Origin: Octopus sinensis
Taxonomy: Eukaryota
Direction: 5' to 3'
Length of the DNA stretch: 64,000 nt
Assembly: GCF_006345805.1 (NCBI RefSeq)
Contig: NC_043010.1
Location: forward strand, 61,690,001 to 61,754,000
The notes below the pieces were generated by a model. The model was not told where the DNA came from. It did no database searches and saw nothing but the letters and a program-made list of their open reading frames with translations. The stretch's first letter is position 1, and every line of letters begins with the position of its first letter. Positions 812 through 55,520 of this stretch are shown one piece after another. The position numbers and the translations under genes are program-made.

Positions 812-1187
812 GAGTGGCTGCGTGGTAAGTAGCTTGCTTCCCAACCACATGGTTCCGGGTTCAGTCCCACTGCGTGGCACCTTGGGCAAGTGTCTTCTGC
901 TATGGCCTCGGGCCGACCAAAACCTTGTGAGTGGGTTTGGTAGACGGAAACTGAAAGAAACCCGTCGTATATATGTTTCTGTGTGTGTTTGTCCCCCCCC
1001 CCCCCAACATCGCTTAACAACCGATGCTAGTGTGTTTACGTCCATGTAACTTAGCGGTTCGGCAAAAGAGACCTAAAGAATAAGTACTAGACTTACAAAG
1101 AATAAGTCCTGGGATCGATTTGCTCGACTAAAGGCCGTGCTCCAGCATGGCCGCAGTCAAATGACTGAAAAAATTAATAGAATAATT
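812..1187 (+). mobile_element. tRNA-derived SINE, family S1, near full length
   Basis: It has the head 'gagtggctgcgtggtaag...ggttcagtccc' with Pol III A/B-box-like motifs, an internal TA/TG tract and the tail 'ggccgcagtcaaatgactgaaa'. Many copies occur in the window. Confidence 0.9.
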
Positions 1188-15160: not shown

Positions 15161-16070
15161 AACTTTTTTTTTTACACACACTCTCACCTTGGCTGGGTAA
15201 CCATGGACCTCCACTACAGTGTGGCATCTGTTTCTGTCTCTCTGTCACAATCCAACCTTTCAACACCTGACCCAAGACCACCTCCTCCGATGCCCCCTCC
15301 CCTCTCAAAAATTCTTTATCTTGCAAGTTATTTGGTGACCCTGCCACTGCTGTTGCCACATAAAAAGCACCCATTCCATTCTGTGAAGCGGTGAGCATTT
15401 GGAAAAGCATCCAGCTGTAAAAACAATGCCCAAACTGGCTTCACCTGTGCTGGGGTCACATGAAAAGCACTCAGCCCACTCTATGGAGTGGTTAGTGTTA
15501 AGAAGGGCATCCAGCCGTAAAAAACCCTGCCAAAACAGACACAGAAGTCTGGTGCAGTCTTCTGCCTGGTTGGGTCCTGTCAAAGCATCCAACCCATGCC
15601 AGCATGGAAGGTGGACATCAGACGATGATGATGATGATGATGATGACACACAGAAATTTACAATACATTATTATTTATATATTATCACATACACATAGAA
15701 GCTTTTACGTATAATTACACACACACAATTACAACCTCCACACACACATGCACACGCAATCTTTTACACACATTTACATTAAATGGACATAATTGACACC
15801 CACCTCAACAGACCTCACACACACTGAATGCAATTACTCCTTCCCTTACACACACACATGCATGCAGACACACACACACACACACATGCGTATACAAATG
15901 CATTCATGACACACAATCTTTTAAAGTACAATTACATAGAACACAATTACCATTCCCTACACATACACACATATTTATACACACACACACATATATATAT
16001 ATATATACACATATATATACACACATATATATACACACAGATATATATACACAGATATATATACACACAG

Positions 16071-16101
<31 letters not shown>

Positions 16102-16793
16102 CACATATATATACACACATATATACATACACATATATACACACACACACACAAACATCCAATCATATACATATACAAACATAGTCACATAGGTTACAAC
16201 CATTCAGACCCACACAAACAGACTGTCCAAATGACCACTCTGGCAAGCAGCAGCAGCAGCAGTGGTGGTGGTAATGGTGGTAGTAACAGTAGTAACTTAC
16301 CTTCAGGTGGACAGCAGTCTTTGGCCACTGGTCAAGGCAAGACAGGTTTCATGGCTTCTTCTGACAGACCTACAAGACAAAGAGCAGACAACAAAACGGT
16401 TAATGATAGCTTACTTAGAATCTGGTAATCTGCAGGCTTTGCTTCAGACAACACTCGAGACATTTTATTGTCATACACATTAGGAAGAAAATAGTTTTAT
16501 AAACTGCATTTATACATACATACAATATATATATATATATATATATAATTGAGTAGTTGAATGAATTATCTTATTATGGATAATTCGGTTAACCGATACC
16601 TGGGTAGCAAATTCACGTCAGAAAAACACGGTTGAAGCTACATGCCTAGAGCAGAGATCACGTGCTATCGTGTGGAAATTTGTGTGTTTTTTTAAATACA
16701 AATATTAGGAATATGCAGCCTTCGAAACATATGTCGAAAATAAAATAAAGGAATTTTGTTAATTCGTCGTTCAACTCCATTCTTTCATTTATT

Positions 16794-18774: not shown

Positions 18775-19251
18775 ATATATATATATATACACCTCCTTGA
18801 CAGCCTATCCTGCTTTAGCTCCTTCTCTGAAGATTCATGGTCTTGCAAGCTGCTCAGAAACTTCACTAGTGCTGGTGCCACATATAAAGCAGCCAGCACA
18901 CACTGTAAAGTGGTTGGCACCAGGAAGGGCACCCAGTTGTAGAAACCATGCCAAAGCAGTCAGTGGAACATGATACAGTCCTTTGGGCCTGGCAAATCCT
19001 CTTGAATCATCCAATCTTTGCCAACATGGAACATAGGACTTTATATGATGATGATGATGATGATAATGGTGGTGGTGGTGGTGAGGAGGAGGAGGATCCA
19101 GGTTGATTGTGCAGCATCTTGTGAAAGTGTGTTTAACAATAAACCTGGCCCTACTAAAGTCTTTTGAGTAGATCTGGTAGGCAGAAAATGAAAGAAAGCT
19201 GATGTGTGTGTGTGTCTCTGCATGTGTATGTATATGTGTGTTCATGTGTAC

Positions 19252-19392
19252 ATTTGTTGTTATTTATGCTCTAATGAGTTTAAAGAAATTTTATTTTATA
19301 AGTATGATAATTTACTTAATACTGGTGAAGAGCGCAAAATAAAATGCAGACATAAGTTACTTTACCTATATAATAAGTTTCATGATAAATAG
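19252..19392 (+). pseudogene. C-terminus of a Penelope-like element ORF (end of the GIY-YIG endonuclease region)
   Basis: It reads ICCYLCSNEFKEILFYKYDNLLNTGEERKIKCRHKLLY..*, matching the PLE terminal pattern C-x-L-C-x-x-E...LLN...E...K-C-R-H. It is 5'-truncated at a TG repeat. Confidence 0.75.
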
Positions 19393-22300
19393 TAATAATA
19401 GTTCCCTATTAGGTTACTTTAGTTTAGTTTAAATTAGTTTAGATAATATATTTTTTGGTTATGTAGTCTAGGCTTTAATTATAGTTAGTCTTTATTGATA
19501 TTTCTTTGTTTTAATTAGTTCACTTTTAATGTATATTAATATAACAGTTTATGGTATGTTAAAACTTTAATAATTTATATTAGATTTTTTTATTTTCTTT
19601 ATTTATATATATTTTTTTATTTTTTTTAAAAAATTTTTATTTTATTTTATTATGTATTTTTATTATGCATTTGTTATATGTATTTTGGAGGATATATTTA
19701 TATGTTGATGGGTGTTATTTAGTGGTGTTTTTATTGAGTTTTGTATGTATGTGTGAATGTTTACGATCCCTTTGTTTTTTGTTTTTTATTTGGTATGTTG
19801 AATTGACAGATTTTATTTGGGTATTGTCTGTTATAATAAAGTATACACACCCATAACAAATATAAGTGCCCACTTCATTCGCGCGTACCTGGAATTGCAT
19901 GTGAGCCTCAACATATACCCAAACGGCCACTCCCGCCCTATACGGACAAATAAACACATACATCCCCAAAAATGGGCGTAATCCCACTCACACCAATCAT
20001 ATGTATACAATTATACACACTAGAATAATACATAACTAACCCAAATATACAGAACATATTAAAAATCACCAACAAACCACCATCACAAATGAAACCTACA
20101 CCAACATACAATGACAAAACTCCCCCCTCTATACCCAATTTACACCCACATAGCAATCCCAATATATTCATCCATACATGGACGCACGTGCGTGAAGCAC
20201 ATGCACACAATAAATACGTACAACCCCCCAATACACACTCATATACATACGTATCAAGCTCGACATCCACAGCAATACGCTTACACCCACTCACACCCAG
20301 ATGGGTGAATTGCACAACCAGGGAACGCACACACACACGTGTGCGTATTTTGATTGTGCAACTCGCCCATATGCATGTATGCGGGCGCGATTACATTGTT
20401 GCACATATTGAGCCCAACTAGCATGCATATGTACATGTGAGGGGGTACACGTACATGCCGTGCGCGTGTACCCCCTGCATTTATACCCGTGCGTGAATAT
20501 ACACATGGAGACTACCACACAGGTACAAATGTGTATAGTAATGGGAGCCCCATCACTACACTCAATGTATACTCTCACCCATCCGCACGGATTGAAAGCG
20601 AATCTCCGGTGTATATGTTGAGGCTTATATGTAGCGCTGTGGAGTTGAACGTCGTTGAAATTGTGAATGAATGGGTGGAGTTGGGAATTGTAACCGGGTG
20701 GTGGGCTAGCGTTGCTTGGAATTGGGAATGAATAGTGTAGTAGTAAGGCAGGTATCGAGAATAGATATGGGTTACTGCAAGTTGTTTGTTAGAGCTGCTA
20801 AGATGAGCTAAAGCTCATAATTGTATATAATAATTTATTATGGTAGTTTTATTAAAGAATCCATTCATAATAAATTTTTTTTAAGTAGTGTTGGTTTGCC
20901 ACGTGGATATAGTTTTTAGTTCCATTTATTCTATTTCTCCATTCATAATTTTAAATGACGTTTACTTTCCATGGCGCGTATTCTTTTTTACATAAGTTAT
21001 ATTTCTATGGTAACGTAATTTTGGTTTGGTTTTTTTAACGGCTAAGAATTTAAGTTCACTTCATAATTTGAAACTGACTTGTAAGTATGTATTTTATTTC
21101 TCCTTATGTCATATTGTTATTTTGATATTCTGGTTAATTACGATGTATTTAATGTTGTTTTTTATTGGAGTGTTTATGTATATGAGATTGTGTGTGAGTT
21201 TTTAGTTGTATAATTTATTTATCTGTATGAGTGTGGGTGTGTAAATATTGTTGTATATATCGAGTTTAGTGAGTATGTATATGCGTATATGTGAGGGAGT
21301 ATATGTATCTGTTGTGTGTGTGTGTTTTGCGTGTGTGTGTGTTTGTGTGTGAATGTGTATATGGGTTTGTTATTTAGGTTTTGGGATGTATGTGTTAATT
21401 TGTCTGTGTGGGGAGGGAGTGGGTTTTTGGTGTATATTGAGGTTTATAAGTTAGTATAGGTATGTGTATAAGTCGTGGGTCTGTGGTTTACGTGTGTGTT
21501 TTTTGTGTGTGAATGTTTAGGTTAGGGGGATTGCTATATAGGTTTGTTATAGAGTTTAGCAAAGGGAGATTTTATCGTTATATGTTTTTAAGAGTTTTGG
21601 TTTATCATGGTTTTTTTAGGGAATTCGTGGTAATTTGTCTATTTTCGATGTTGGTTGTTTTATTACATTGTTTCATTCATAATTTTTGAGTGGTGTTCGT
21701 TTTGCCACGTGAATATTATTTTTAATTCCATTTATTCCATTTCTCCATTCATAATTTTAAAAGATGTTCGTTTCCAGAGCGGTTATACTTTTATACATAT
21801 GTTAAGTTCCTTGGTAAAGTAATTTTGTTTGGTGTATATGTTGAGGCTTATATGTACTTGTGGGTGTGTGTGAGTGGGGTGGGTGTTTGTATTTGTTATG
21901 GGTGTGTGGTTTACGTGTGTGTATTTGTGTGTGAATGTATAGGTTAAAGGGATTGCTATATAAGTATGTTATAGTGTTTAGTAAAGGGAGGTTTTATCAT
22001 TTATGTTTTGTGAGTTTTAGCTTATCATGGTAGTTTTATAAAAGAATCCATTCATAATTTTTGTGTTTATTTGTCTGTGTGGGGTTGAGTGGGTTTTTGG
22101 AGTATATGTTGAGGTTTATATGTATGTATAGGTATGTGTAAGTGGTGTGGGTATTAGTATATGTCGTGGGTGTGTGGTTTATGTGTGTGTATTTGTGTGT
22201 GAATGTTTAGGTTAGGGGGATTGCTATATAGGTATGTTATAGAGTTTAGTAAAGGGAGATTTTATCATTATATGTTTTTATGAGTTTTGGTTTATCATGG

Positions 22301-22912
22301 TAGGTTTGTTAAGGAATTCGTAGTAATTTGTGTCTATTTGCGATGTCTGTTGTTTTATTGCATTGTTTCATTCATATTTTTAAGTAGTGTTCGTTTTACC
22401 AAGTGAATATAATTTTTAATTCCATTTATTCCATTTCTCCGTTCATAATTTTAAGTGATGTCCGTTTTCTAGAGTGTGAATGTGGGTTGTATGTGTGTGT
22501 GTGTGGGAGTATGAATAAGTATTGTGTTGAAGTATTTAGCTATTTTATTTATAGTTGCCTAGACGTTTTTATGTGTATGTATAGGGATATATATATAGGG
22601 GTGTGATTTAGTGTATGTAGTTAGATATGGTTATATATAATTAGGTATATGTGTATGGGTGTATATATAGTTTATTATATTATTATTATATTTTTTTGTT
22701 TTGTTTTATATTTTATATTTTTTATTTTATATTTTATATTTTATATTTTATATTTAATTGTTGATAGGTTTATTTTAGTTTATATATTGTTTATATATTG
22801 ATTATATATAGGTTATATATGGATTATATATTTATATTTTTTCATTCATACTTTAATTATTTTAAAATTATTATTTTTATATTCTAAAATATTGATATTT
22901 TAGATTGGAAGT

Positions 22913-22955: not shown

Positions 22956-23133
22956 CGGTTTTTTTGACTATTTATTAAAATTTTATGTATTGATTAAGTC
23001 TTTCCTTGTTTGTTTTGTAAAATAGTGGTTTTGTCTCTAATAATATTTTATAATATTTTACTATAAAATTGGATTTAATCCTAAATCTGATTTTTTCCCT
23101 GTAAATTTGGATTTATTCCCTAATATTTATTAT

Positions 23134-23160
<27 letters not shown>

Positions 23161-23165
<5 letters not shown>

Positions 23166-23972
23166 GACCCACACACACGCACATGGTTTCAATCAACGGA
23201 ACAGCCTGCTCACGAAGTGAACATTCAAGTGGCCGAGTACTCCACAGACACATGTACCCTTAACAACAGTTGTCAGGGTACAACTCATTTTTGCCAGTTG
23301 AGTGGACTGGAGCAACATGGAATAAAGTGTTCCGCTCAAGGACATAACACACTGCCAGGAAAGATAAACAGACTTTTGGTGTAAACCCGTCCACATCATG
23401 TTAGTGAGCTCCATATCTCAATAGAGGAGTCATGTCTCCTCAGACAGCAAAATACCCTGAGAGGAGTTTGGCCCCTTCCAATAGAACCCCACAGTTTCAT
23501 ATGTGATTTCTATGCAACACACTCCTCCCCAGCTTATCAGTTCTTCCAATCTGTGCAAGATTATTGCCCTCAACCTCTTGTCCTTTTATTACGTATTTCA
23601 TTAATGTTTCCCTTGGTCGGTGGATCTCCATTATTTGTGTCTGTGTCACGTTAGAGGAGTTCCATTCCAAGTGTGAAACCTATGGCTGACATTGTGCTCC
23701 CAGCTGCACTTCCTGCCTTCATAAAGGTCCATACCGCATTGCTGTGTAGACCTTTATGGTAAAGCACATCGAGGACTGGCAGTAAATAAAAAATACAAAC
23801 TGAATTTACTCAGGTACAAGATGTACCCCTAATTTAGGGCTAAATCTTGACACGAAGTTCTTTCCCATCATAGATTGAGCTTTGACCCATGTATAAGTCA
23901 AACCCTAGATTTTACAGCTAAAATCAAGCATAAAATAGAGACTTATATACACAAGTAAATACAGTGTATATG

Positions 23973-24009
<37 letters not shown>

Positions 24010-24229
24010 CTATATAGACATCTTTTTATTTTATTTTTTTTTTTACTTGTTTCAGCCATTTGACTGCGGCCATGCTGGAGCACCGCCTTTAGTTGAGCAA
24101 ATCGACCCCGGGACTTATTCTTTGTAAGCCAGTACTTATTCTATCGGTCTCTTTTGCCGAACCGCTAAGTGACAGGGACGTAAACACACCAGCATCGGTT
24201 GTCAAGCAAAGCTAGGGGGACAAACACAT

Positions 24230-24292
<63 letters not shown>

Positions 24293-25373
24293 ATATACAC
24301 ACAGACCCACACACACGCACATGGTTTCAATCAACGGAACAGCCTGCTCACGAAGTGAACATTCAAGTGGCCGAGTACTCCACAGACACATGTACCCTTA
24401 ACAACAGTTGTCAGGGTACAACTCATTTTTGCCAGTTGAGTGGACTGGAGCAACATGGAATAAAGTGTTCCGCTCAAGGACATAACACACTGCCAGGAAA
24501 GATAAACAGACTTTTGGTGTAAACCCGTCCACATCATGTTAGTGAGCTCCATATCTCAATAGAGGAGTCAATGTCTCCTCAGACAGCAAAATACCCTGAG
24601 AGGAGTTTGGCCCCTTCCAATAGAACCCCACAGTTTCATTATGTGATTTCTATGCAACACACTCCTCCCCAGCTTATCAGTTCTTCCAATCTGTGCAAGA
24701 TTATTGCCCTCAACCTCTTGTCCTTTTATTACGTATTTCATTAATGTTTCCCTTGGTCGGTGGATCTCCATTATTTGTGTCTGTGTCACGTTAGAGGAGT
24801 TCCATTCCAAGTGTGAAACCTATGGCTGACATTGTGCTCCCAGCTGCACTTCCTGCCTTCATAAAGGTCCATACCGCATTGCTGTGTAGACCTTTATGGT
24901 AAAGCACATCGAGGACTGGCAGTAAATAAAAAATACAAACTGAATTTACTCAGGTACAAGATGTACCCCTAATTTAGGGCTAAATCTTGACACAAAGTTC
25001 TTTCCCATCATAGATTGAGCTTTGACCCATGTATAAGTCAAACCCTAGATTTTACAGCTAAAATCAAGCATAAAATAGAGACTTATATACACAAGTAAAT
25101 ACAGTGTATATGTATATATATATATATACACACACACACACCACACACACACACCTATATAGACATCTTTTTATTTTTTTTTTTTTTACTTGTTTCAGCC
25201 ATTTGACTGCGGCCATGCTGGAGCACCGCCTTTAGTTGAGCAAATCGACCCCGGGACTTATTCTTTGTAAGCCCAGTACTTATTCTATCGGTCTCTTTTG
25301 CCGAACCGCTAAGTGACAGGGACGTAAACACACCAGCATCGGTTGTCAAGCAAAGCTAGGGGGACAAACACAT

Positions 25374-25400
<27 letters not shown>
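23161..25400. repeat. 1138-bp near-identical tandem duplication
   Basis: The sequence 'acacagacccacacacacgcacatgg' occurs at 23161 and 24299, and the units run colinearly until the (CA)/(TA) tracts. Confidence 0.92.
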
Positions 25401-25458
<58 letters not shown>

Positions 25459-28995: not shown

Positions 28996-29479
28996 TGTGT
29001 GCGCGCGCGTTTGTCCCCCACCCCTCGTACCAGCACTTGACAACCAGTATTTATGTATTTACCTCCCCCGTAACCAAGCAGTCTGTTGAAAGAAAACTGA
29101 TAAAATAATTAGCAAGCTTTTTTTTAAAAAAAAAAAAACGTTTCTGGGATCGATTCATTTGAGTAAAAACTCTTTGAAAGCAGTGCTCCAGCATGGCCAC
29201 AGTCTAATGCCTGAAACATTAAAAGATAAAAACTGCAAACATACATGCACGCGCGCACAACACATACATGTATATACGTATTTATGAATATGAGTATAAT
29301 ATATGTATATATAACTATATATATATGTACATGTGTGTGTGTGTGTGTATACAAATCTATTTTTTTCGGATTGGGTATAAAGTTAGATGTGTGACTCAGA
29401 GGCCAAGAGTCTCATACCTTGTATTTACAAATATATATATATATATATATCGTCATACTACATGTATATAACACATACA

Positions 29480-30260
29480 TATACATAATATACACGCACA
29501 CAAACACACACATATATATGTATATATACATATATGTATACACACTCACATACACACGGACATATAATATATACATGGGTAAATTACCTATACGTGTATA
29601 CACACACATATATACATACACACACATATATATATATACATACATGTAGACATATACACATACATATATTATACTTACATGCTTTCACACACACATTGAT
29701 ACACAAACATGTATACACACATATATACATACACACACATATATACATAATATAAACATACACACAGACATATACTTACATATTTTCACACACATTCATA
29801 CGTGTATACACACGCATATATACATACATGTAAACATACACACAGATATATTATACTTACATCACACACATGTATACATACATGTAAACATACACACATA
29901 TATTATACTTACATATTTTCACACATTCATAAATGGATACACACACACACATGTATACACACACATATATACACACACACAGACATATTATACTTACATA
30001 TTTTCACACACACATTCATACATGTATACACACACATATATGCATACATGTAAACATACACACAGACATATACTTACATATTTTCACACACACATTCATA
30101 TATGTATACACACACATATATACACACACACAGACATATTATACTTACATATTTTCACACACACATTCATATATGTATACACACACATATATACATACAT
30201 GTAAACATACACACAGATATATTATACTTACATGTTTTCACATAGACACACACAGAGAAA
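29480..30260. repeat. Degenerate AC/AT-rich minisatellite with a unit of roughly 60-85 bp
   Basis: The block 'atattatacttacatattttcacacacacattcata' recurs throughout. Confidence 0.85.
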
Positions 30261-35960: not shown

Positions 35961-37219
35961 TTGTTTGTCTATGCCAGAAAAAAGGCTTTTTCGTTCGTCC
36001 TCTTGTGTTTGTTTTTGTACATGTATTTTAATTTTGCAGTCTTATTGTTACGTCTTGTTTGTGTTCGTACTCATTGTGCCCCGCTGCTTGAAATTTTATT
36101 TTAATTCTCTCGCAGGAAGGCCTATTGGATTAGTGTTCTGTTATGCCTTCGAAACATGCCTGACTCCTCTAGCGACAGCTGATGACGGGTGTTTTGTCCT
36201 TGTGTAACCTGTCCTGTATTTGGTTTTCGTTTTCCGTTTTCTTGTTTTTTGTTTTTTGGCTTTTTCTGTTTCTACGTCTTATGTGATGTCCTGTACTTCC
36301 GTATAATTATTTATATTGCATGTATATATACATGTAGATGTAGGTACGTACATATATGTTTGTATGTATGCATAATTTTTATTTATCTCCTTATTGTCTG
36401 ACAGCGCCCCGCATCAGGTTCGTTCCGATTCGTCGTTTCGATCCACTTCTTGGTCCCCTTTTTTTATATTAATATTATTATATTGAAGATGCGGTACTCT
36501 CTCCCTTTGCTTTAACCCCTTCAATCTTTCTCCCTCCCCCTCCTCCTCTCTCTTCGCCGCGTGTCCCCCTCCTCCTTCCCTCTTCCTTGCCTATAAAACA
36601 AAATTCCTTTACACGTGGTTACCACTATTGAAAAGACTGCCTCCACGCGCTGCTACTACACTTTCGTCCTTGCCAGCAAAAAGGCTTCTTCGTTCGTCCC
36701 CTTGTGTGGTTAATTTCCTGTATAGTATTCTTGTTATTTTCTCGTTTTGTAACTAATTGTACTTTTTGTACATGTATTTTTATTTGTGCAGTTTTATTGT
36801 TTGTCTATGCCAGAAAAAAGGCTTTTTCGTTCGTCCTCTTGTGTTTGTTTTTGTACATGTATTTTAATTTTGCAGTCTTATTGTGTCTTTGTGTGTTCGT
36901 ACTCATTGTGCCCCGCTGCTTGAAATTTTATTTTAATTCTCTCGCAGGAAGGCCTATTGGATTAGTGTTCTTTATGCCTTCGAAACATGCCTGACTCCTC
37001 TAGCGACAGCTGATGACGGGGGTTTTGTCCTTGTGTAACCTGTCCTGTATTGGTTTTCGTTTTCCGTTTTCTTGTTTTTTGTTTTTGGCTTTTTCTGTTT
37101 CTACGTCTTATTGTGATGTCCTGTACTTCCGTATAATTATTTTATATGCATGTATATATACATGTAGATGTAGGTACGTACATATATGTTGTATGTATGC
37201 ATATATTTTATTTATCTCC
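35961..37219 (+). mobile_element. Non-autonomous element with about 430-bp direct terminal repeats, inserted in (TA)n
   Basis: 35961-36391 matches 36797-37219 at an offset of 836. TATAAAA lies at 36592-36598 in the spacer, after a pyrimidine-rich tract. Confidence 0.6.
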
Positions 37220-38459
37220 TATATATATATATATATATACGTATATATATATATACGTATATAAATGTGTGTGTGTTGTGTGTGTATGTATATATACGTA
37301 TGTGTGTGTATGCATATTTATACATCCATAAATGCATGAATGTATGTATTTCACGCGTCTACATACATCGCCATATAGATATGAATGAATGACGGGAGGA
37401 AGCGAGGGGTGGGGTGAGGTGGCGGCTATATTATATTTTCATTCATAACGCCAGCCGTCTGCTATCAACACCAACATTTTTCTCTGTTTATAATTGTTTT
37501 CGCTATTCCCAGCGTGAAACAACGATGGAGGCGCTGGTTGTGGTAGTGGTGGTGGGAGGAGAGAGGGGGGACGCGCGATATTGCTTTGCTTCCCCCTGCC
37601 CCCTCTCACTTCACTCCTCGCATACAATCAACCGTCCCCCCCCCTCGCCGTCGCTGTCGTCGTCTTCTATTCTTCCTCCTTCCTCCTCCTCCCTGTCCGC
37701 ACGTTACCGCTACAACACCCTCCCCTTCCCAGCAGCAGCAGCAACCTCCATCGCCACCACCACCACTATAGTGACTGCCACCAATTACAGTTCCACGTCA
37801 CCACCACCACCACCGCCACCGCAATCATCTTCTGCGCTACAACCACTACAATATCTGCTGCAGCTTCACCGCCGCCACCATCACGTTCCGCAGAAACGCA
37901 CGCGCGCGCCAGAACCATCACCACCACTACTATCATAGTCATCATCATTATCATCATCATCAGCGACGTCTTCACCATCACCACCACCACCACCACCACC
38001 ACCACCACTACCAAAATCACCCTCCCTTCACCACCGCCTTCGTCGCTATTACAACCACCTACCTCCACACCTCCGTCTCCCTCACCCTATTCATAATCCA
38101 ACGAAGGCGCTTCAACGTGGTTGCTCGGCCTGCTAGAAACAACAGCCAAACCTCCCCCTGAACTCACGTCCTATTGTCTTGGAATACAAAAGGATGAATT
38201 AGATTTATCCGAATGTGCATTGCCTGTGCGTTTGGAGGAAGTAATGGTGGATGGTCACGGCATGATGAGATAGATCATAGGTCTGTTTGATTAGGGCTGA
38301 CCTGGGGCGAAACGTATATAACAACACCTATTTCCAACATTACCACCACCACCAATACAACACAATCCTCGCCATTCTCACCGCCGCCCTCGTCAATATT
38401 CACACCATCCCCATCACCGCCATCACACCAATATAACAGTTTTTTGTTATCCTCTACCA

Positions 38460-38526
38460 CTATTCTCACCAATATATATACATATATATATGCATATATA
38501 TATATATGCATATAATATATATATAC

Positions 38527-38558
<32 letters not shown>

Positions 38559-38662
38559 GCATATATATATATACATATATATATATGCATATATATATAT
38601 ATTATATACATATATATATACATATATATACATATATATATACATATATACATACATATATT

Positions 38663-38718
<56 letters not shown>

Positions 38719-38745
38719 CATATATATATATATACACGCACACAC
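38460..38745. repeat. (TA)n/(CA)n compound microsatellite
   Basis: Read directly from the sequence. Confidence 0.95.
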
Positions 38746-40321
38746 ACAACGCACCAACTATATCACCACAACCTACCTACATCAATAAACCAATATTCCA
38801 TCATCATCATCATCAACTTCTGCCGCCACAAATGCAACGCCATCTTTACCACCACCACCATCACCAATATACCAATATACGATAACGACACCGCCACCAT
38901 CTCACCATCACCACCACCACCCCCATCACCAATAGTTTACTGTTTTTGCCACCACCCCCACCACAATCCTTCCCAATAAACACACCAACTCCGCCACCAC
39001 CACCGTCTACCACCTCATATGACCATCCTCGTTCTCCTCCCCGCCACCATCCTTACCAATAAAAACCACCACCGTCTCCACCATCATCACCACTGTCATC
39101 ATCGATATACCGATATCGAGTCGTTAGCACCGCCGCCGCCAATACAACACCATCTGCACCAGCACCACCACCACCACCATCGATATACCCATATTCCATC
39201 TTCACCATCACCGCCGCCGCCACTATAGCACCATCTCTGCCTCTACCGCCACCATCGCCACTGCCAAATATGACCATTCCTCGCCGTCCCCGCCATCATC
39301 TTTACCCATATAGCACCGTCTCCCCCACCACCATCCTCGCCGTCCCCACCGTCTGGTGTGGATTATTTGGGCGGTGCATGTCGGCAGAGAAGTTAACAAT
39401 AAGGCTGACGGGTGCTGAATTAACTATTTCCCCTTGCCGCCGCCGCCTCCACCGCCACGTTTCCCTGTCCTACCCCAGACACTGCATCACCACCCAGGAT
39501 AGGCCGGGGTGGGTGGCAGCGGGGTGGCGAGCGTCTATTATCTTTCCTTCTGTTTACATTTTCGATCAACGACCTCCCTCCATCCACCCCCACCTCGTTC
39601 ATCCCTCATCCGCCGTCACCGCCGCCCCCCACTCAGTCGTTCACACCACCCCTCGTCACCCCCGTCTTCCTTCCTTCCTCTCCTCCCGCCCCCTTCTAAC
39701 ACATGTTCACACGTAGGGGGGAAGGGTGAGAGGCAATCATACACCTCCTTTTTACACATAAACCCCCGTCTTTCACACACCCATACACACACACAAATAC
39801 ACACATACAGACACACGTACACATACAGACGTTCAGCTTCAAGACTACACCGCTCAGCTTCCACGTTTACACACACACACACAGACGCGCACACATGCCC
39901 ACACACGCACCCATCCACCTTCAACGCAAACACAAGAACGGTCTCCAGCATACACATCAACACATACGCACACTCTCCCACACACACACACTCGCAGCTA
40001 AACACACACACACACAAACACATAGAAGTGCTCTCATCCACACGCAAGACACACCAGCGCAAGCAAGCATCAAGACTTACGATGTCAATCTCACGCACAC
40101 AGACAAGGGTGCAGAACATATGCACACACACACACACACATGCACACACACGCTCTCGCGCACACACACACACAGACATAAGAACATACATCTTACTACA
40201 GACGAAGCTGTTGACAAACCAAGATAAAACTCCAACGACCACACGCATTGAATTCATACAATCCCACTGATACATTTGCACACACGTTTTAATACACATA
40301 CATACACACACAATATTATAC

Positions 40322-43080: not shown

Positions 43081-43514
43081 AGCAAGATTGGTGTTCCAGA
43101 AAAAAAGTCAACAGTTGAAGGATAGAATCAACCAGGATGAAAGACCAGCTGTGATGAGAGATTTCCTCGTCGAATCTTTGATTAATTAACCACAGGGAAG
43201 AGGAAAAGGATGCCCTTTTGATCATGACAATGACCAGCTAAAGTCAACCCTCAAAACAGCTGGAATTAAAGGGGAAAATGTGAGAAACTAAAGTCCAGAA
43301 GGGTGCCAACTGATGTCCGTGTATCACCGTTGAAATTGACACTTTTTCAAGGCAGAGCATTTAAAAGGATTTAAGATACAAAAACAACAACCAAACACTT
43401 TACCAATGTCAACTTGTCATTTTGATCAGCCTGCTTTATGAGAAAATTTACCATCAACAACGTCAGCATGGAGGAACATGGTCAAGAGGACATTGAAATT
43501 ATCAGATACAACAT

Positions 43515-44335
43515 ATATCATCATCATCATCATCATCATCATCATCGTTTAACGTCCGTTTTCCATGCTGGCATGGGTTGGACGGTTCGACTGAGGACTG
43601 GGAAGCCAGGAGGCTGTACCAGGACCCAATCTGATCTGGCAGTGTTTCTACAGCTGGATGCCCTTCCTACCACCAACCACTCAAAGAGTGTAGTGGGTGC
43701 TTTTTATGTACCACCAGCACAGGGGCCAGAGGAGCTGGCATCGGCCACAATCGGATGGTGCTTTTTACGTGCCACCAGCACAGAAGCCAGTCAAAGCGAC
43801 ACTGGCATCAGCCACGTTCAGATGGTGCTTTTTACATGCTACCGGCACGGGACTCACAACTACAATTTCCATTTGATTTGATTTTGATATTGCTGTTGAT
43901 GTTGATGTACTTGACTCAGTAGGTCTCCTCAAGCACAGCATGTCACCCTACGACCTAAGGTACTTTTGAGTGGGCTGGTTATATGACACTGGTGTAGGTT
44001 ATAGCTGTGGACCCACATTATTTGCTGGATCTTCTCAGTCACAGCATATTTCCAGAGGTCTTGGTCTTTTGTCATTGCCTCTGTGAGGCCCAACGTTCAA
44101 AGGTCATGCTTCACCACCTCACCCCATGTCTTCCTGTGTCTCCCTCTACCTCAGATTCCTTCCACTGTTTGGGAGTGGCACTTTTTCACTTTTCCATCCA
44201 TAGTACATAACCATACCAACGCAAACATCTCTCCTGCACACCACATCTGATGCTTCTTATGTCTAACATTTCTCTCAGGGCCCTTACACTCTGTCGTGTG
44301 TGCACACTGACATTACACATCCAGCGGTTCATACT
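43515..44335 (-). mobile_element. RTE LINE 3' end with tail
   Basis: The minus strand reads RWMCNVSVHTRQSVRALREMLDIRSIRCGVQERCLRWYG...GRGRHRKTWGEVVKHDL, an RTE C-terminus. It is followed by a 3' UTR and a (GAT)n tail near 43515-43545. Confidence 0.85.
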
Positions 44336-50979: not shown

Positions 50980-53516
50980 TTTTGCCTTTTTTTGCCTCAT
51001 CTGCCTTGCCTTCCAACAAAACAGCTCGTCTGTCTGTGTGTCGTCGTCGCCGTCGTCGCTATCGTCATCGTCGTCATCATCATCATAATAATAATCATCA
51101 TCAACATCACTACCACCACACACGTTCCCCCCTCCCTTCTTTTTGTCGCCGTCGTCGCCTTCTTACTTTACACTTTCTCTGTCTCGCTTTATTTTTCTAC
51201 GTCTTTTTTTTCTTTTTTTTCCCCCCCTTCTCTTTCCCTATTTATTTCCTTTCTCTTTTTCTTCTTCACGTCTACGCCAGCCTCTCCCACCCTACCCCTT
51301 GCTTCGTTTTCTTTCTTTTCTCTCTCTCTGCCTTCGTCCTCTCCTTCTCCCCCCGCCCCCCACATCACGCCTTCCTATTCTTTATTTATCTTTTCTTTCT
51401 TTCCTTTTCATCCCTTCCCCTCTGCCTCTCGCTTTCTTATCTTTCCGTCTCCCCCCCTTTTCTTTTCTTTATCTCTTCCTATCCTTTTATTCAATTCTTT
51501 CTTTCTCCTCTTCTCCTTCTTCTTCCCTTCTTTTCTGTCTTTTTCGTCACCTTCACCGTTCTTTCCCTCACCTTCTACTTCCCTTTCTTCCTTTTTCCAT
51601 TCTCCTGTCTCTCTCTCTCTCTTTCCCCCCTTTCTCCCTCTATCCAACCCACCTATTTCTCCACATCCCCATCACCCTTTCCTCACGCTACTTCCGCCTG
51701 CAACGTCTGTCTCTTCCATTTTTTTACTTATCTTTTCACAGTTCTTTTCTCTATCACATTCTCCTGTCCTCATTATCCTTCCCCCTCATCTCCACCTCCA
51801 CCTTTCACTGCTTCTTCTTTTCTTTCCTCTCAACATCTTCTCCCCTATCCTTCCAATATTTCCTTTTACCTATATCTGTCTTTATTTATCTCCATTCCTC
51901 CATTAATCCCATGTTTCTATTTTCTCTCTTTATCCATTTCCCCTCCCCCTCCACTCTTTTTCTTCTCTTTCTTCTTTTTTTTCTCTTCTCCCACTTCTAT
52001 CTTCAGTTCTTCCTCTCCTCCTCCTCCAATTGTTTCTAACACATTTTTCTCTTATCTCTTTCTACTACCCTCCCCTCCACCACCACCACCACCACATTCT
52101 CTCTCTCTCTCTTTCTCTCCATCACCTTCCTTATCTATCCAAGTTTTCTTTACTCTTATCTCTTTTTTTTTTATTGACCTGTTTTCTCTTATTCTCTTCA
52201 CATTTAATTTAATCTCATTCTTTCTTCTCCATTTCTTCCACCTTCCTTTCATTTAGACATTTATTTCTTCTATTTTTAACGTTATCCCACTCTCTTTCTA
52301 CCAAATTGTCTCCTGCTTTCTCAATCTCTCTCTCTCTCTGTCTCTACTTCTCTTCTCTTCTCTTTTCTTTATCTTCCAATCTCTCTCTCTCTTACTCTCT
52401 TCTTTTCTTTCCTCTTCCTTTTGCTCTGCTATCTTTCTCTTGTAATTTGAACCAACTCGCCCTTCGCCCTTACCTTTGGTTTATCTCTTGTCACTCTCTT
52501 TCCCCCCCTTTCTCTCTCTTCCTCACTTTTCTCCCTCTCTCTTTCTCTCTCTCATCTCCTCCCATCCTCTCTCTATAGCTTGTAGTCTTTCTGCCCACCT
52601 TCATCACTCGTTTACCAAACGCCATATACACCAAGCCACATATATTCACAACCACTCTCGTCTGCTCTTACCAATTCCTCTCCCCATCGTCTGCATTCTT
52701 TCACCGTTGACCCCACCACCGCCGTCTCCATACTACTTATCTACCCTGCTTCTCCCTCCCCAACACTATACACTAAGCAGTTTGCTATGCCATTATTCTC
52801 CATCTTTCTCCTACGCTCTCTCTCTCTCCCACTCTCTCAATCTCTATCCTTCTTTCACTCACTCTCTCACTTCCACTCACTCTGCTTTCATAAAAGCCAT
52901 ATTGTTTATTTTAAATTACACACACACAATCCTCACTCTCTGATTTATACTCTCTATTAATACAATGTCAACTATTCCCTCTATCTTTAGAGCCATATAT
53001 ATTTATATACAAGTATTTTTTTTTCTCTTTCATTTTAAGCTTTGCCCTCTCTCCCTCTTACTCTCTCTATTTCACTCTCAGTTCATCTCTGATTCCTAGT
53101 CATTGAAATTCTATGCTTTCTTCCTCTTATTTCCACTACTAAACTTTTTTTTTTATTTTTCTCCTCCCCTTCTCTCTTTGCTTTTATTCTATCTTTCTCC
53201 ACTTCTGCCAGTGTCTGTTCCACCCCCTTCACTGTCACGCGTATCCCTCTCAACACACTCTCTCTCTCCTTCTCTTCTCCTCCCACATCATCCATCCATT
53301 TCTCACATGACCGTCTCTTTATTTCTTTTACTCCCTCCTTTTCTTTTTCTCTCTCCTACTCCGGTCTATTTTCCCCCTCTTTTCTCCTCTCACTACCACT
53401 ATTTTATCTTTCTGTCTCTATCTATAACCTTTCTAAAACCTCTCACTCCGTCTACTCTACCTTTTCTTTTAATTCTCTTTCTCTCTCCCGCTATCTCTCT
53501 CACTCTCTCTCTCCCG

Positions 53517-53555
<39 letters not shown>

Positions 53556-53930
53556 CATACACATACATGCACACACACACATATATATATATTCCTTTTT
53601 CACGATTATATTTCTCCCAACACTTTGCCCTTAAACACTCCCCCTCTCTCTATACTATCTCTCTTTCTCTCTTTACCTACCCTTTACCCCCCCATCTGTC
53701 TACCAATCTATATCTTTAAGCACTATCTTCCCCCTCTCTCTCTAGCTTTATCCTCTCTACTCTCTTCCACACTCTTCGCCTTTCTCCGTTCTTCTCTCTC
53801 CTACCTGCCTCCCACTTCCTCTAATTTCCTTTCGTTCTTCCCACCTGCGCCTCCCCCTCTCTCTACTCTCCCTTACTCTCACCACGCACGCTCAGTTATT
53901 TCTCATTGTCTCTCAATCTTTCAGACGGGT
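50980..53930. repeat. About 3-kb polypyrimidine (CT-rich) low-complexity tract
   Basis: The plus strand is almost entirely C/T, which explains the F/S/L/P pseudo-ORFs. Confidence 0.9.
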
Positions 53931-54148
53931 CTTGTGTATGTATATGTGTGTATGTGCGTGTGTATGTCTAACCACACACACACACACAGGCACACACACG
54001 CACGCGCACGCACACACACACATAAACGCATATACCTACACACACAAATACATACAAAGACACGCGCGCGCTCGTACGCACGCTCACCCACAACCATATA
54101 TACACAGCCTTCACAACAGCTACTCCTGCTACTACCACCACCACCACC

Positions 54149-54479: not shown

Positions 54480-54764
54480 CATATACATTACCATACACAC
54501 ACACACACATATGTGCATGTTTATATATATATATATATACACATATATATATACATATACACATATACACATATATATAAATATATATATATATATATGT
54601 ATACAAAGATATATAAATATATATGTAAATTATGTATGCTCTGAAGCACACAAAAATACATATATACATATATGCATATATATGTATATATATATATATA
54701 TACATATACATATAATATATATATTTATATATATGTACATATATATATATATTTATATATATGT

Positions 54765-54819
<55 letters not shown>

Positions 54820-54867
54820 AATATATATATATATACATATAAATATATATATATATAAATATATATA

Positions 54868-54899
<32 letters not shown>

Positions 54900-55225
54900 G
54901 CTCTGAATATATGCATATGTACGTGTCTGAATATATGTGTGTGTATGTACATATATATATTTGTATGTATGTGTGTATATATATATATATGTATATACAC
55001 ACATATGTATATATATATTGTATATATGTGTGTATGTAAAAATATTTAGGCTTGTAAATATATGCGTGCACATATATATTCATATATATGTATACATTTG
55101 TATATGTATATATGTATGTAGGCACGTACGTATATGCTGATGGTTGTAACGAACTGACTCAGACACACATACATACGCACTGACATATGTACACATAACT
55201 AAACAAGCACATATGTGTTTACATA

Positions 55226-55257
<32 letters not shown>

Positions 55258-55389
55258 ATTCACACATATATAAATATATATATATATATATATTCATCAC
55301 ACACACATATATATATATATTCACACACATATATAAATATATATATTCACATACATATAAACATATATATATGTATATATGGATATATT

Positions 55390-55420
<31 letters not shown>

Positions 55421-55468
55421 CATACATATAAATATATATATATATATACATATAAACATATATATATG

Positions 55469-55520
<52 letters not shown>

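What the first reader, a model, noticed from the sequence alone, without database searches (positions are those of the whole stretch)
20090..20575. Fold-back with transition-saturated arms biased toward G-U pairing on the minus strand
Seen in sequence: the apex 'acgcacac-acacac-gtgtgcgt' at about 20325-20346 centres an inverted repeat whose roughly 240-nt arms align almost gap-free at only about 55-60% identity. Most mismatches are transitions. My hand tally is roughly 50 mismatches that are A-C on the plus strand (G-U on minus-strand RNA) against about 16 of the opposite kind. Inference: either a long minus-strand RNA stem has been kept by wobble pairing, or the arms experienced strand-specific deamination (A-to-G, C-to-T) and were then re-inverted. 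A speculative source is A-to-I editing of a retroelement hairpin fixed by reverse transcription; coleoid cephalopods are known for very high ADAR activity.
Basis: partly seen in the sequence, partly recalled or inferred. Interest (0 to 1): 0.72.

Follow-up and report, generated by a model that had tools for sequence, protein, structure and literature searches.

The report
Fold-back scarred by one-strand transition mutation
The hairpin-forming inverted repeat in this octopus DNA is real, and its arms differ almost only by one-directional A/G and C/T changes. This most likely records strand-specific mutation plus inversion inside a G+T-rich repeat array, not a conserved RNA hairpin.

Summary
The arms 20090-20335 and 20336-20575 align with only 6 gap columns: 56% identity, 81-85 transitions, 19-22 transversions. 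Of the transition mismatches, 66-69 would be G·U in minus-strand RNA and only 15-16 in plus-strand RNA (p~5e-9). The minus strand folds into one long hairpin (-228 vs -146 kcal/mol).

The bias does not belong to the hairpin pair. The right arm (tract 20336-20607) shows the same or a stronger one-way difference against direct-repeat copies that cannot pair with it (55:5 and 59:6). The other copies are symmetric among themselves.

The fold-back lies in a 3.7-kb C-poor, G+T-rich tandem array in octopus DNA. The left arm is an array unit in inverted orientation. The excess is extra mutation, about 3.4 times the neutral expectation, not purifying selection.

If one exchange between the two inverted 26-nt "B blocks" is undone, all the aberrant sequence falls into a single 350-nt inverted unit. 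A→G and C→T on one strand always turn Watson-Crick pairs into G·U, so the wobble-paired stem is a by-product.

Which state is ancestral, and which enzyme acted, remain unresolved. No copies outside the window were found.

The parts
19200..22900 (+). C-poor, G+T-rich ('K-rich') tract. It is an irregular tandem array built from A, B and C blocks, flanked by ordinary-composition SINE-bearing DNA.
   Evidence: Composition. Repeat structure. A blocks at 20920, 21726 and 22420. (TG)20 at 21313-21351.
19844..20335 (-). Left arm 'L': one array unit in inverted orientation. Its ends are at 19843/19844 (plus or minus 2 nt) and 20335/20336.
   Evidence: rc(19844-19930) followed by 20336 onward is collinear with copy u_c across the junction, with a 3-nt gap. 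19740-19843 followed by rc(20260-20335) is collinear with the sequence upstream of U2a.
20325..20346 (.). Apex palindrome acgcacac/acacac/gtgtgcgt: two unit starts joined head to head.
20336..20607 (+). Right-arm tract 'R': balanced composition (G+T 0.48). It carries C/A where every other copy has T/G. It ends sharply one base before the B block.
   Evidence: Against rcL 68:15, against U2a 55:5, against U3 59:6. Taking the C-poor state as ancestral: T>C 29/65 and G>A 8/48, and T>C 10/17 and G>A 6/12 at its outer end. K (G+T) profile.
19860..19945 (-). Second aberrant tract 'S2', inside the left arm. In the repeat unit's own orientation it differs in the same direction as R, so on the window's plus strand the change reads A→G/C→T. 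It begins inside the left B block.
   Evidence: 19844-19918 against rc(u_c): 56 identical, 17 transitions all in one direction, 2 transversions. Against u_c=u_d: T>C 11/29, G>A 4/23, A>G 0/8.
20090..20335 (-). Inner left arm: G+T-rich in unit sense, hence A+C-rich on the plus strand. It is the partner of 20336-20575.
   Evidence: Derived A>G 12/28 against R=U2a, but not clearly above non-partner copy U3.
19965..20089 (-). About 125 nt present in the left arm and absent from the right arm. It forms the bulge of the hairpin and is homologous to the 'tail' of other units.
19896..19921 (-). B block of the left arm. It is a hybrid: the unit-sense 5' 16 nt are unmodified and the 3' 9 nt carry T>C changes.
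   Evidence: I3, 90% complementary to 20611-20631.
20608..20633 (+). B block of the right side (ggtgtatatgttgaggcttatatgta). It is unmodified, marks the end of tract R, and is the proposed exchange point.
   Evidence: Other B blocks lie at about 21430, 21835 and 22100.
21189..21430 (+). U2a: a direct-repeat copy of the same unit type as R and L, used as outgroup.
21834..22481 (+). U3 (u_c and u_d): direct-repeat copies, 92-97% identical in their best-conserved blocks (about 85% over the whole units), used as outgroups.
20440..20476 (+). Perfect 12-bp local hairpin inside R (agggggtacacg ... cgtgtaccccct). The G+T-rich copies have G·U or mismatched versions.

Best explanation
Shown by the data:
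- The fold-back consists of one unit of a G+T-rich tandem array lying in inverted orientation next to the following unit.
- Its G·U-on-minus bias exists because tract R (20336-20607), and a second tract (about 19860-19945) on the other strand, differ from every other copy of the repeat, direct or inverted. The differences are dense, one-directional transitions with almost no transversions.

Logical consequence: A→G and C→T on a single strand change A-U and G-C pairs into G·U. A hairpin in that strand therefore stays paired automatically, and no selection is needed.

Inferred history (my preferred reading, ~0.45):
1. A single 350-nt unit was inverted. This unit is today's 20336-20607, plus a B block, plus 19844-19895.
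2. Over its whole length it acquired wobble-type transitions on what was then the plus strand. About 45% of adenines and 17-21% of cytosines changed.
3. There are two possible routes. In the cumulative route, the array is under a plus-strand-specific deamination-type bias (a displaced or non-template G+T-rich strand, R-loop-like) and the inverted unit records that bias on its opposite strand. In the one-off route, the inverted copy was made or exposed during the rearrangement, through error-prone T·G/G·T mispairing synthesis or through deamination of a single-stranded or RNA:DNA-hybrid intermediate.
4. A later exchange between the two inverted 26-nt B blocks flipped the central 686 nt (19922-20607). 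This put the altered half-unit opposite an unaltered G+T-rich unit and produced the present mosaic.

The core claim is that strand-asymmetric transition mutation plus inversion explains the locus, and that the wobble stem is a by-product. I hold this at ~0.8.
For: - Arm statistics and folding.
- Same bias against non-pairing direct copies; G+T-rich copies symmetric among themselves (16:30, 14:20, 11:11).
- Neutral yardstick from SINE and other repeat pairs in the window: transitions to transversions 3730:1908 = 1.95, symmetric. With 19-22 transversions, about 40 transitions are expected, about 20 per direction. Observed: 15-16 and 66-69.
- The R lineage has 39 transitions to 2 transversions (p 2e-5 against neutral). 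T>C 29/65 against A>G 1/17 (p 0.004).
- A window-wide scan with bases collapsed to purine/pyrimidine finds unidirectional transitions only at this locus (17:0 and 17+3 against 1+3).
- Inverted orientation and collinearity with the array.
- Tract limits: the apex, the B block (20607|20608), mid-B block on the left, and about 13-16 nt from 19844.
- Undoing a B-to-B flip leaves one contiguous ~350-nt zone of G+T 0.4-0.6 in a 0.66-0.82 tract.
- The G+T-rich copies themselves show A>G (23/78) well above G>A (10/112), p 4e-4, occurring independently in different copies. This means a bias toward G+T acts on plus-oriented units.
- Context of the changed adenines: 5' U/A in 20/29 changed against 9/36 unchanged (p 5e-4); AA dinucleotides became GG 5, AG 4, GA 1, AA 2.
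- Background from papers: G+T excess on non-template strands and single-strand deamination (PMC10030826); strand-coordinated clusters in single-stranded repair intermediates (PMC6786661).
Against: - The ancestral state is not settled. R could be the unaltered state and all other copies the altered ones. R contains a perfect 12-bp local palindrome that arises in only 0.5-7% of simulations starting from a G+T-rich ancestor. R also has the fewest private transversions (2, against 4-7).
- The flip model needs the 5' 16-17 nt of the B block to have stayed unmodified in the altered unit (about 1-3% by chance).
- It needs two inversions.
- A regional bias would have to stop at the array borders, because the flanking SINEs have normal composition.
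- Plus-strand C→T rates differ between orientations: 17-21% against 13/16.
- Copies u_b, u_c and u_d are 92-97% identical in their best-conserved blocks, so any bias is not visibly active since their duplication.
- Only one locus is available. No copies outside the window were found.
Confidence: 0.45

Rival explanations
1. Local burst without a flip. L (19844-20335) was inverted in one step. A single hypermutation event then converted ~40-60% of adenines (and fewer cytosines) in sharply bounded tracts on opposite strands: the plus strand at ~19860-19945 and the minus strand at 20090-20607. This is the geometry of the two 3' single-stranded tails (or RNA:DNA hybrids on them) on either side of a break at ~19946-20089. 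The candidate enzyme is an ADAR-type adenosine deaminase acting on a duplex or hybrid.
For: - The tract strands fit 5'→3' resection polarity, left = plus and right = minus. This matches the 'single-switch' clusters described in PMC6786661.
- Burst-like ratio of transitions to transversions, 39:2.
- About 45% of adenines changed, with a 5' U/A preference and AG>GA intermediates. These match known ADAR preferences (PMC5850729).
- ADARs deaminate dA in DNA/RNA hybrids in vitro (PMC5389660) and act on hybrids at breaks (PMC8448848).
- The DNA is from an octopus.
Against: - It does not explain why the tracts end at the B blocks.
- The A→G excess in the inner left arm is not clearly above that of the non-partner copy U3 (13/39 vs 10/39).
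- The mutation density is orders of magnitude above known single-strand clusters.
- The unmodified 125-nt middle needs an extra assumption (repair synthesis).
- Fixation of ADAR-type changes in germline DNA has never been shown.
Confidence: 0.2
2. Reverse polarity. R, together with 19860-19945, is the unaltered state. It is either a relic or a B-block-to-B-block cassette brought in by gene conversion from a balanced-composition copy elsewhere. All the G+T-rich copies are the altered ones, with near-saturating C→T and ~30-45% A→G on the unit's sense strand. The cause would be long-lived single-strandedness, helped by microsatellite 'purification' toward (TG)n.
For: - The purine patterns fit independent A→G changes in each G+T-rich copy (chi-square 0.46).
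- R has a perfect 12-bp palindrome that appears as G·U versions in the other copies (no-G·U folding simulation p 0.06-0.09).
- R has the fewest private changes.
- The tract limits at conserved B blocks look like conversion end points.
- A spectrum with C→T above A→G is the classic single-strand deamination spectrum (PMC10030826).
Against: - It needs ~1000 changes over 3.3 kb, or several parallel saturating events.
- The array contains sub-blocks with other three-letter compositions: the A block is G-free yet 23% C.
- G+T-rich or A+C-rich (TG/TA)n-type tracts are a common intrinsic class in octopus DNA, about 1 per 30-40 kb.
- No balanced copy was found anywhere.
- CpG observed/expected of ~1 in R fits recent TG→CG change better than an old sequence in a genome with CpG observed/expected of 0.45.
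Confidence: 0.2
3. A functional long hairpin RNA transcribed from the minus strand (for example a precursor of small RNAs), whose stem has been maintained by tolerating only G·U-forming substitutions.
For: The minus-strand fold is -228 kcal/mol (z -9.8) with ~85% of positions paired. G·U to A·C is 66-69:15-16.
Against: - The same directional bias appears against non-pairing direct copies.
- The G·U class is in ~3.4-fold excess over the neutral rate, rather than the A·C class being depleted.
- There are 19-22 uncompensated transversions.
- The bias vanishes or reverses in the outer stem.
- Rfam has no match.
- Any same-strand A→G/C→T process gives this pattern for free.
Confidence: 0.04
4. A hairpin transcript of a retroelement was hyper-edited by ADAR, reverse-transcribed and re-integrated.
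For: A→G-dominated spectrum, ~45% of adenines changed, ADAR-like 5' neighbour preference. Octopus DNA.
Against: - Both arms are collinear with the surrounding tandem array, so this is an in-place rearrangement and not an insertion.
- No poly(A) tail or flanking duplication was noticed on reading the ends, and there is no ORF of 90 aa or more in the array proper. These were not searched for formally.
- The partner arm is not specifically edited.
- The best-paired B block is unedited.
- A second tract lies on the opposite strand.
- Part of tract R also has G→A changes (6/12).
Confidence: 0.05
5. Assembly or base-calling artefact at a palindrome in low-complexity DNA.
For: Palindromes and (TG/CA)n tracts are error-prone for long-read assembly. 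No read data are available to check.
Against: - The differences are 34% transitions with almost no indels.
- The left arm has 125 nt that are absent from the right arm.
- The outer part of the left arm matches copy u_c better than its own partner does.
- The tract boundaries are sharp and coincide with repeat landmarks.
Confidence: 0.04

Closest known systems
Strand-coordinated mutation clusters (kataegis-like) in single-stranded DNA formed during break repair or break-induced replication (PMC6786661, PMC3521656)
   Same: Dense runs of one mutation type on one strand, with sharp limits. A possible single switch of strand between two adjacent tracts with the polarity expected from 5'→3' resection. 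Association with a rearrangement.
   Different: The dominant change here is at A (A→G), not at C in a TpC context. The density (~45% of target bases) is far higher. The event is fixed in an animal germline genome. The flip history explains the two strands without any break between them.
ADAR hyper-editing of long double-stranded RNA formed by inverted repeats (PMC4365171, PMC5625713, PMC5850729)
   Same: A→G on one strand at ~45% of adenines. 5' U/A favoured. AA dinucleotides changed together, with AG more frequent than GA. An inverted-repeat partner is present. The organism has very high ADAR activity.
   Different: The changes are in the DNA, not only in RNA. The partner arm is not clearly edited. 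The best-paired segment is untouched. Some C→T-type changes are present. The same difference is seen against copies that cannot pair.
Compositional strand asymmetry from single-strand deamination: G+T excess on non-template or leading strands (PMC10030826), and the vertebrate mitochondrial heavy strand (from memory)
   Same: C→T and A→G accumulate on the strand that is more often single-stranded and make it G+T-rich. An element inserted in the opposite orientation would record the bias on its other strand.
   Different: The skew here is extreme (G+T 0.75-0.85) and confined to a 3.7-kb array. Nuclear examples known so far are a few percent.
Error-prone replicative rearrangement (MMBIR/FoSTeS) with point mutations near breakpoints, and T·G-mispairing translesion polymerases (from memory, not checked in the library)
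   Same: An inverted segment carries a burst of base substitutions limited to the rearranged piece. Wobble mispairs (template T:dGTP, template G:dTTP) give exactly A→G and C→T on the product strand.
   Different: Reported mutation densities near breakpoints are of the order of 1 per 100-1000 nt, not ~1 per 4 nt.
Repeat-induced point mutation (RIP) of fungi (from memory)
   Same: Transition-only hypermutation of repeated DNA. The C→T component here is at CpA on the mutated strand (TG→TA on the plus strand).
   Different: RIP is fungal and produces only C→T/G→A. Here the main change is A→G/T→C, the genome is animal, and only one copy of the repeat is affected.
Hairpin-RNA (hpRNA) and long inverted-repeat small-RNA loci (from memory)
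   Same: A stem several hundred nt long, formed by one strand only.
   Different: There is no evidence of selection on pairing (see the rival explanations), and no expression data.

Membership tests
ADAR hyper-edited dsRNA region | Mismatches are A→G only, clustered on one strand | tested here: inconclusive
   In the main part of R, T>C is 29/65 on the plus strand (A→G on the minus strand) with purine changes near background. The outer end of R shows G>A 6/12 and tract S2 shows G>A 4/23. The polarity depends on which state is ancestral.
ADAR hyper-edited dsRNA region | Both strands or arms of the duplex are edited | tested here: not met
   Partner arm A>G 13/39 against non-partner copy U3 10/39 (p 0.62). 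The B-block stem, the best-paired segment, has no changes.
ADAR hyper-edited dsRNA region | 5' neighbour preference: G avoided, U/A favoured; 3' G favoured | tested here: inconclusive
   5' U/A in 20/29 changed against 9/36 unchanged adenines (p 5e-4). G neighbours are too rare to test, and the signal is confounded with CA/TG dinucleotide composition and CpG decay.
ADAR hyper-edited dsRNA region | The difference is between RNA and its genomic DNA | tested here: not met
   The changes are in the genomic sequence itself. No RNA data are available.
APOBEC/AID-type kataegis | Strand-coordinated C→T (or C→G) in TpC / WRC context | tested here: not met
   The dominant change is at A/T. The C→T component is at CpA on the mutated strand (TG→TA 7, TG→CA 3, GG 0/8).
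Single-switch cluster from bidirectional resection | Left tract mutated on the top strand, right tract on the bottom strand, adjacent to a break | tested here: inconclusive
   The polarity fits: plus strand at 19860-19945, minus strand at 20090-20607. However, 125 nt between the tracts are unmodified, the inner-arm signal is weak, and the flip model explains the same pattern.
Functional hairpin RNA locus | Pairing maintained by selection (compensatory changes, depletion of disruptive changes) | tested here: not met
   The disruptive A·C class is at the neutral level. The G·U class is in excess. The bias is equal or stronger against non-pairing copies.
Functional hairpin RNA locus | Strand-specific transcript or small RNAs | not testable with these tools
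   No expression data. Rfam has no match at gathering thresholds.
Fold-back transposon / MITE / retroelement hairpin | Terminal inverted repeats with target-site duplication, dispersed copies, or poly(A)/reverse-transcriptase features | tested here: not met
   Both arms are collinear with the tandem array. No other copies were found in the window, in 163 kb of O. vulgaris DNA, or in the other collections. No poly(A) tail or target-site duplication was noticed on reading the ends; these were not searched for formally.
Fungal RIP | C→T/G→A only, in a fungal genome, affecting all copies of a duplication | tested here: not met
   Octopus DNA. The main change is T→C/A→G. Only one unit is affected.
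Tandem minisatellite array with an inverted unit | Direct repeats with shared blocks; one unit reverse-complemented in register | tested here: met

The most novel reading that the evidence does not exclude
The tracts are ADAR-type adenosine deamination written into octopus germline DNA. The route would be either direct deamination of dA in RNA:DNA hybrids at a broken or transcribed palindrome, or repair templated by a hyper-edited transcript. If so, the exceptional RNA-editing activity of coleoid cephalopods would occasionally act as a DNA mutator at inverted repeats.
Probability: 0.1. Interest if true: 0.9.

Novelty: new variant of a known kind. Interest (0 to 1): 0.5.

Why it matters
Strand-coordinated hypermutation is well documented in tumours, yeast models, retroelements and fungal repeats. 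A germline-fixed tract with mainly A→G-type changes, hitting ~45% of target bases in a nuclear animal genome, is unusual.

If the altered state is the derived one, the locus records one of two things. It may record an extreme local strand-asymmetric mutation bias, for which an inverted repeat unit acts as a built-in control. Or it may record a one-off mutagenic rearrangement. Both readings can be tested genome-wide in the available octopus assemblies.

There is also a practical warning. A long hairpin with a strong G·U excess on one strand is not evidence of a conserved RNA structure, because any same-strand A→G/C→T process produces it automatically.

Tried and rejected
1. Purine/pyrimidine alternation as the sole cause of the transition-rich alignment. 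Rejected: only one register gives few transversions.
2. R as an ordinary old, decayed copy. Rejected: its lineage has 39 transitions to 2 transversions, against a neutral ratio of 1.95:1.
3. Bisulfite-like sparing of CpG in the C-poor tract. Rejected: CpG observed/expected is ~1.0, not enriched.
4. G→A changes in R as secondary CpG decay after T→C. Mostly rejected: 7 of 11 are TG→TA.
5. Polarity from Watson-Crick-only folding. R gives -57.2 against simulated -49±5 kcal/mol, p 0.06-0.09, inconclusive. The longest perfect stem gives p 0.005-0.07.
6. A→G in the unpaired 125-nt bulge as a test of hairpin dependence. The outgroup alignment is too poor (many transversions) to decide.
7. A regional bias without a flip. 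Rejected: R would always have been plus-oriented.
8. 3'-tail or fill-in models with breaks at the two inversion end points. Each explains only some of the tracts.
9. Search for outside copies. Protein searches with the R ORF and the L ORF gave no hits. Exact-pattern scans of metagenome contigs (twice) and prokaryotic genome contigs gave 0 hits. Eight O. vulgaris loci (163 kb) gave only generic (CA/TA)n similarity.
10. Rfam and tRNA scans of the window found nothing.
11. Literature searches found no description of such DNA tracts in cephalopods.
Full report
**1.

The sequence has a perfect 8+8 palindrome around 20335|20336. A formal global alignment of the reverse complement of 20090-20335 with 20336-20575 gives 246 columns. 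Of these, 137 are identical (56%) and only 6 are gap columns. There are 81-85 transitions and 19-22 transversions, whatever the scoring scheme.

The transitions are strongly directional. In 66-69 columns the left arm (read as its complement) has T or G where the right arm has C or A, which gives G·U in minus-strand RNA. Only 15-16 columns are of the opposite kind (p 5e-9).

The sequence alternates purines and pyrimidines in places, so I checked neighbouring registers. Only the true register has few transversions (11-13% against at least 27%). The homology is therefore real.

As RNA, the minus strand folds into one continuous hairpin (-228.4 kcal/mol, z -9.8). The plus strand reaches only -145.9 kcal/mol.

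The fold-back continues beyond the reported coordinates. After a ~125-nt bulge in the left arm, 19925-19964 pairs with 20564-20605 (16 G·U-on-minus against 3). The two 26-nt 'B blocks' (19896-19921 and 20608-20633) then pair at ~90%.

**2. Context.**

The window is octopus DNA. A SINE-derived ORF matches 'hypothetical predicted proteins' of Octopus vulgaris (E down to 2e-56). There are no Rfam or tRNA hits.

The fold-back sits in a 3.7-kb tract (about 19200-22900) whose plus strand is depleted in C (about 5%) and rich in G+T (0.65-0.85). The tract is an irregular tandem array with recognisable blocks:
- A blocks at 20920, 21726 and 22420.
- B blocks at 20608, about 21430, 21835 and 22100.
- C blocks.

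Several G+T-rich copies are 92-97% identical in their best-conserved blocks and about 79-85% over whole units.

Tracts this rich in G+T or A+C occur about once per 30-40 kb, both in this window and in 163 kb of O. vulgaris DNA fetched for comparison.

The left arm is an array unit lying in inverted orientation:
- rc(19844-19930) followed by 20336 onward is collinear with copy u_c across the junction.
- 19740-19843 followed by rc(20260-20335) is collinear with the sequence upstream of copy U2a.

**3. Where the asymmetry comes from.**

The decisive comparison is. The right-arm tract R differs from its inverted partner by 68:15, counting partner T/G against R C/A versus the reverse. It differs from the direct-repeat copies U2a and U3, which cannot pair with it in a hairpin, by 55:5 and 59:6. 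The G+T-rich copies compared among themselves are symmetric (16:30, 14:20, 11:11).

The bias is therefore a property of one tract, 20336-20607. That tract has balanced composition (G+T 0.48) and ends one base before the B block.

A window-wide scan for repeat pairs that match once bases are collapsed to purine/pyrimidine finds unidirectional transitions only here. It reveals a second tract inside the left arm. Segment 19844-19918 against rc(u_c) has 56 identities, 17 transitions all in one direction, and 2 transversions. Against two outgroups the tract (about 19860-19945) shows T>C 11/29, G>A 4/23 and A>G 0/8 in the unit's own orientation. On the window's plus strand this is the opposite strand from the changes in R.

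**4. What this excludes.**

*Selection for a wobble-paired stem.* SINE and other repeat pairs in the same window give transitions to transversions of 3730:1908 = 1.95, with symmetric directions. With 19-22 transversions, about 40 transitions are expected, about 20 per direction. The pair-breaking class (15-16) is at that level. The G·U class (66-69) is about 3.4 times above it. That is excess mutation, not removal of disruptive changes.

*Ordinary decay of an old copy.* Taking the C-poor state as ancestral, the R lineage has 39 transitions to 2 transversions (p 2e-5). T>C is 29/65 against A>G 1/17 (p 0.004).

*A logical point.* A→G and C→T on one strand convert A-U and G-C pairs to G·U and never to mismatches. 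Any such process keeps a hairpin in that strand paired.

**5. Anatomy and the flip.**

The limits of the aberrant sequence coincide with structural landmarks:
- R runs from the apex to the base before the right B block.
- The second tract begins inside the left B block, whose unit-sense 5' 16 nt are unmodified and whose 3' 9 nt are modified.
- The second tract ends ~13-16 nt from the outer end of the inverted unit.

The two B blocks are inverted repeats of each other. If the 686 nt between them (19922-20607) are turned round in silico, all aberrant sequence becomes one contiguous ~350-nt inverted unit (G+T 0.4-0.6). It then sits in an otherwise uniform G+T-rich tract (0.66-0.82), bounded by the two inversion end points.

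That is the pattern expected if three things happened. One unit was inverted. It diverged from its siblings by wobble-type transitions on the then plus strand. A later exchange within the B blocks flipped the centre. This explains all four boundary coincidences.

A burst model without a flip explains only the two coincidences at the inversion end points. The cost of the flip model is a second inversion, plus the need for the first 16-17 nt of the B block to have escaped change (about 1-3% by chance).

**6. Polarity remains open.**

Evidence that the G+T-rich state is ancestral and R is derived:
- All other copies, including deeper paralogues, are G+T-rich.
- G+T-rich (TG/TA)n-type tracts are a common intrinsic class in this genome.
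- The array contains sub-blocks with other three-letter compositions, such as the G-free, C-containing A block. This argues against tract-wide C→T conversion.
- R's many CpGs arise naturally from TG→CG (7 of 29 ancestral TG).

Evidence that R is the unaltered state:
- R contains a perfect 12-bp palindrome (20440-20451 / 20465-20476). Its counterparts in other copies are G·U versions. It arises in only 0.5-7% of simulations from a G+T-rich ancestor (whole-structure test p 0.06-0.09).
- R has the fewest private transversions.
- The purine patterns fit independent A→G changes in each G+T-rich copy (AAA 16, AGA 13, AAG 10, AGG 12; chi-square 0.46).

That last result also shows that a G+T-directed bias (A>G 23/78 against G>A 10/112, p 4e-4) acts on plus-oriented copies regardless of the fold-back. 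This is why I slightly favour the cumulative version, in which both kinds of unit move in opposite unit-sense directions under one plus-strand bias.

I put about 55-60% on R being at least partly derived.

**7. Mechanism.**

Taking R as derived, about 45% of the adenines on the affected strand changed, and up to 59% at the outer end of R. Cytosines changed at 17-21%, up to 50% at that end and almost only at CpA. Changed adenines have a 5' U/A (20/29 against 9/36, p 5e-4). AA dinucleotides became GG 5, AG 4, GA 1, AA 2. The neighbour preference resembles the rule given in PMC5850729: G avoided upstream and favoured downstream, with AG intermediates outnumbering GA.

A hairpin-dependent ADAR event is nevertheless poorly supported:
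- The partner arm is not more changed than the non-partner copy U3 (13/39 against 10/39).
- The best-paired B-block stem is untouched.
- The second tract is on the other strand.
- The context signal is confounded with CA/TG composition and with loss of newly made CpG.

Three candidate processes remain:
- (a) A strand-asymmetric single-strand, R-loop-type bias on the G-rich displaced strand. G+T excess on non-template strands and promotion of R-loops by GC skew are described in PMC10030826.
- (b) Low-fidelity synthesis of the inverted copy with T·G and G·T mispairs. This rests on my own knowledge of translesion polymerases and replicative rearrangements and was not checked in the library.
- (c) Deamination of single-stranded tails or RNA:DNA hybrids during break repair. 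Strand-switching clusters are described in PMC6786661. ADAR acts on DNA in hybrids in vitro (PMC5389660) and at breaks (PMC8448848).

None can be singled out from one locus.

**8. Comparison and novelty.**

The locus works like a strand-coordinated hypermutation scar combined with inversion of a repeat unit. It fails the defining tests for the following (see the membership table):
- an ADAR-edited RNA region, because the changes are in DNA and the partner arm is unedited;
- APOBEC kataegis, because the wrong base is affected;
- fungal RIP;
- a fold-back transposon or retroelement;
- a selected hairpin RNA.

I class it as a new variant of a known kind. It is interesting mainly because the mutation density, the A→G predominance and the germline fixation are unusual, and because the inverted unit offers an internal control for a strand-specific bias.

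**9. Limits.**

All inferences rest on five or six related copies within one window. No copies outside the window could be retrieved. No reads or RNA data were available. The order of events (inversion, mutation, flip) is inferred, not shown.

Noticed in passing
window 23123-24315 and 24258-25458: A 1.2-kb tandem segmental duplication at 98.2% identity (5 transitions, 3 transversions). It includes a SINE and AT/AC microsatellites.
   Followed up: no
window 35961-36391 and 36797-37220: A 433-nt direct repeat at 96.5% identity whose few differences are all transversions (0 transitions, 4 transversions).
   Followed up: no
window 51000-54000: A ~3-kb pyrimidine-rich tract (C+T about 85% on the plus strand, G as low as 3%). 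It produces spurious ORFs of up to 513 aa. Its skew is of a different kind from the G+T skew of the array (transversion-type).
   Followed up: no
window 38300-39200 and 29400-30250 (also 15850-16190, 39750-40200): G-poor tracts of CAC/CAT or (CA/TA)n type. The reverse complement of these (CA/TA) satellites resembles the G+T-rich array units at 62-68% identity, probably through low-complexity convergence.
   Followed up: partly
whole window: CpG observed/expected is 0.44-0.46 in ordinary sequence. It is ~1.0 in the skewed low-complexity tracts, including the array and both arms. This suggests these tracts are unmethylated, young, or continually regenerate CpG through TG→CG / CA→CG changes.
   Followed up: partly
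window 54517-55612: An AT-rich imperfect palindrome of ~1.1 kb, 70% self-complementary, with symmetric transition directions. It served as an internal contrast to the finding.
   Followed up: no
window 812-1185, 1499-1839, 18869-19068, 43438-43881 and many others; L001-L008: At least two SINE families, each with more than 10 copies in 64 kb. ORFs read through them are annotated as 'hypothetical predicted protein' in Octopus vulgaris GCA_951406725.2, so those annotations are probably repeat-derived.
   Followed up: partly
window 20440-20476: A perfect 12-bp local hairpin (agggggtacacg / cgtgtaccccct) inside the right arm. The G+T-rich copies have G·U or mismatched versions. It bears on which state is ancestral.
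   Followed up: yes
window 20918-20990, 21726-21800, 22420-22470: The A blocks of the array are G-free but about 23% C. The array is a patchwork of sub-blocks with different three-letter alphabets.
   Followed up: partly
window 21189-22481 (copies rcL, U2a, U3): The G+T-rich copies show A→G about three times more often per site than G→A (23/78 against 10/112). The changes arose independently in different copies, including one outside the fold-back.
   Followed up: yes
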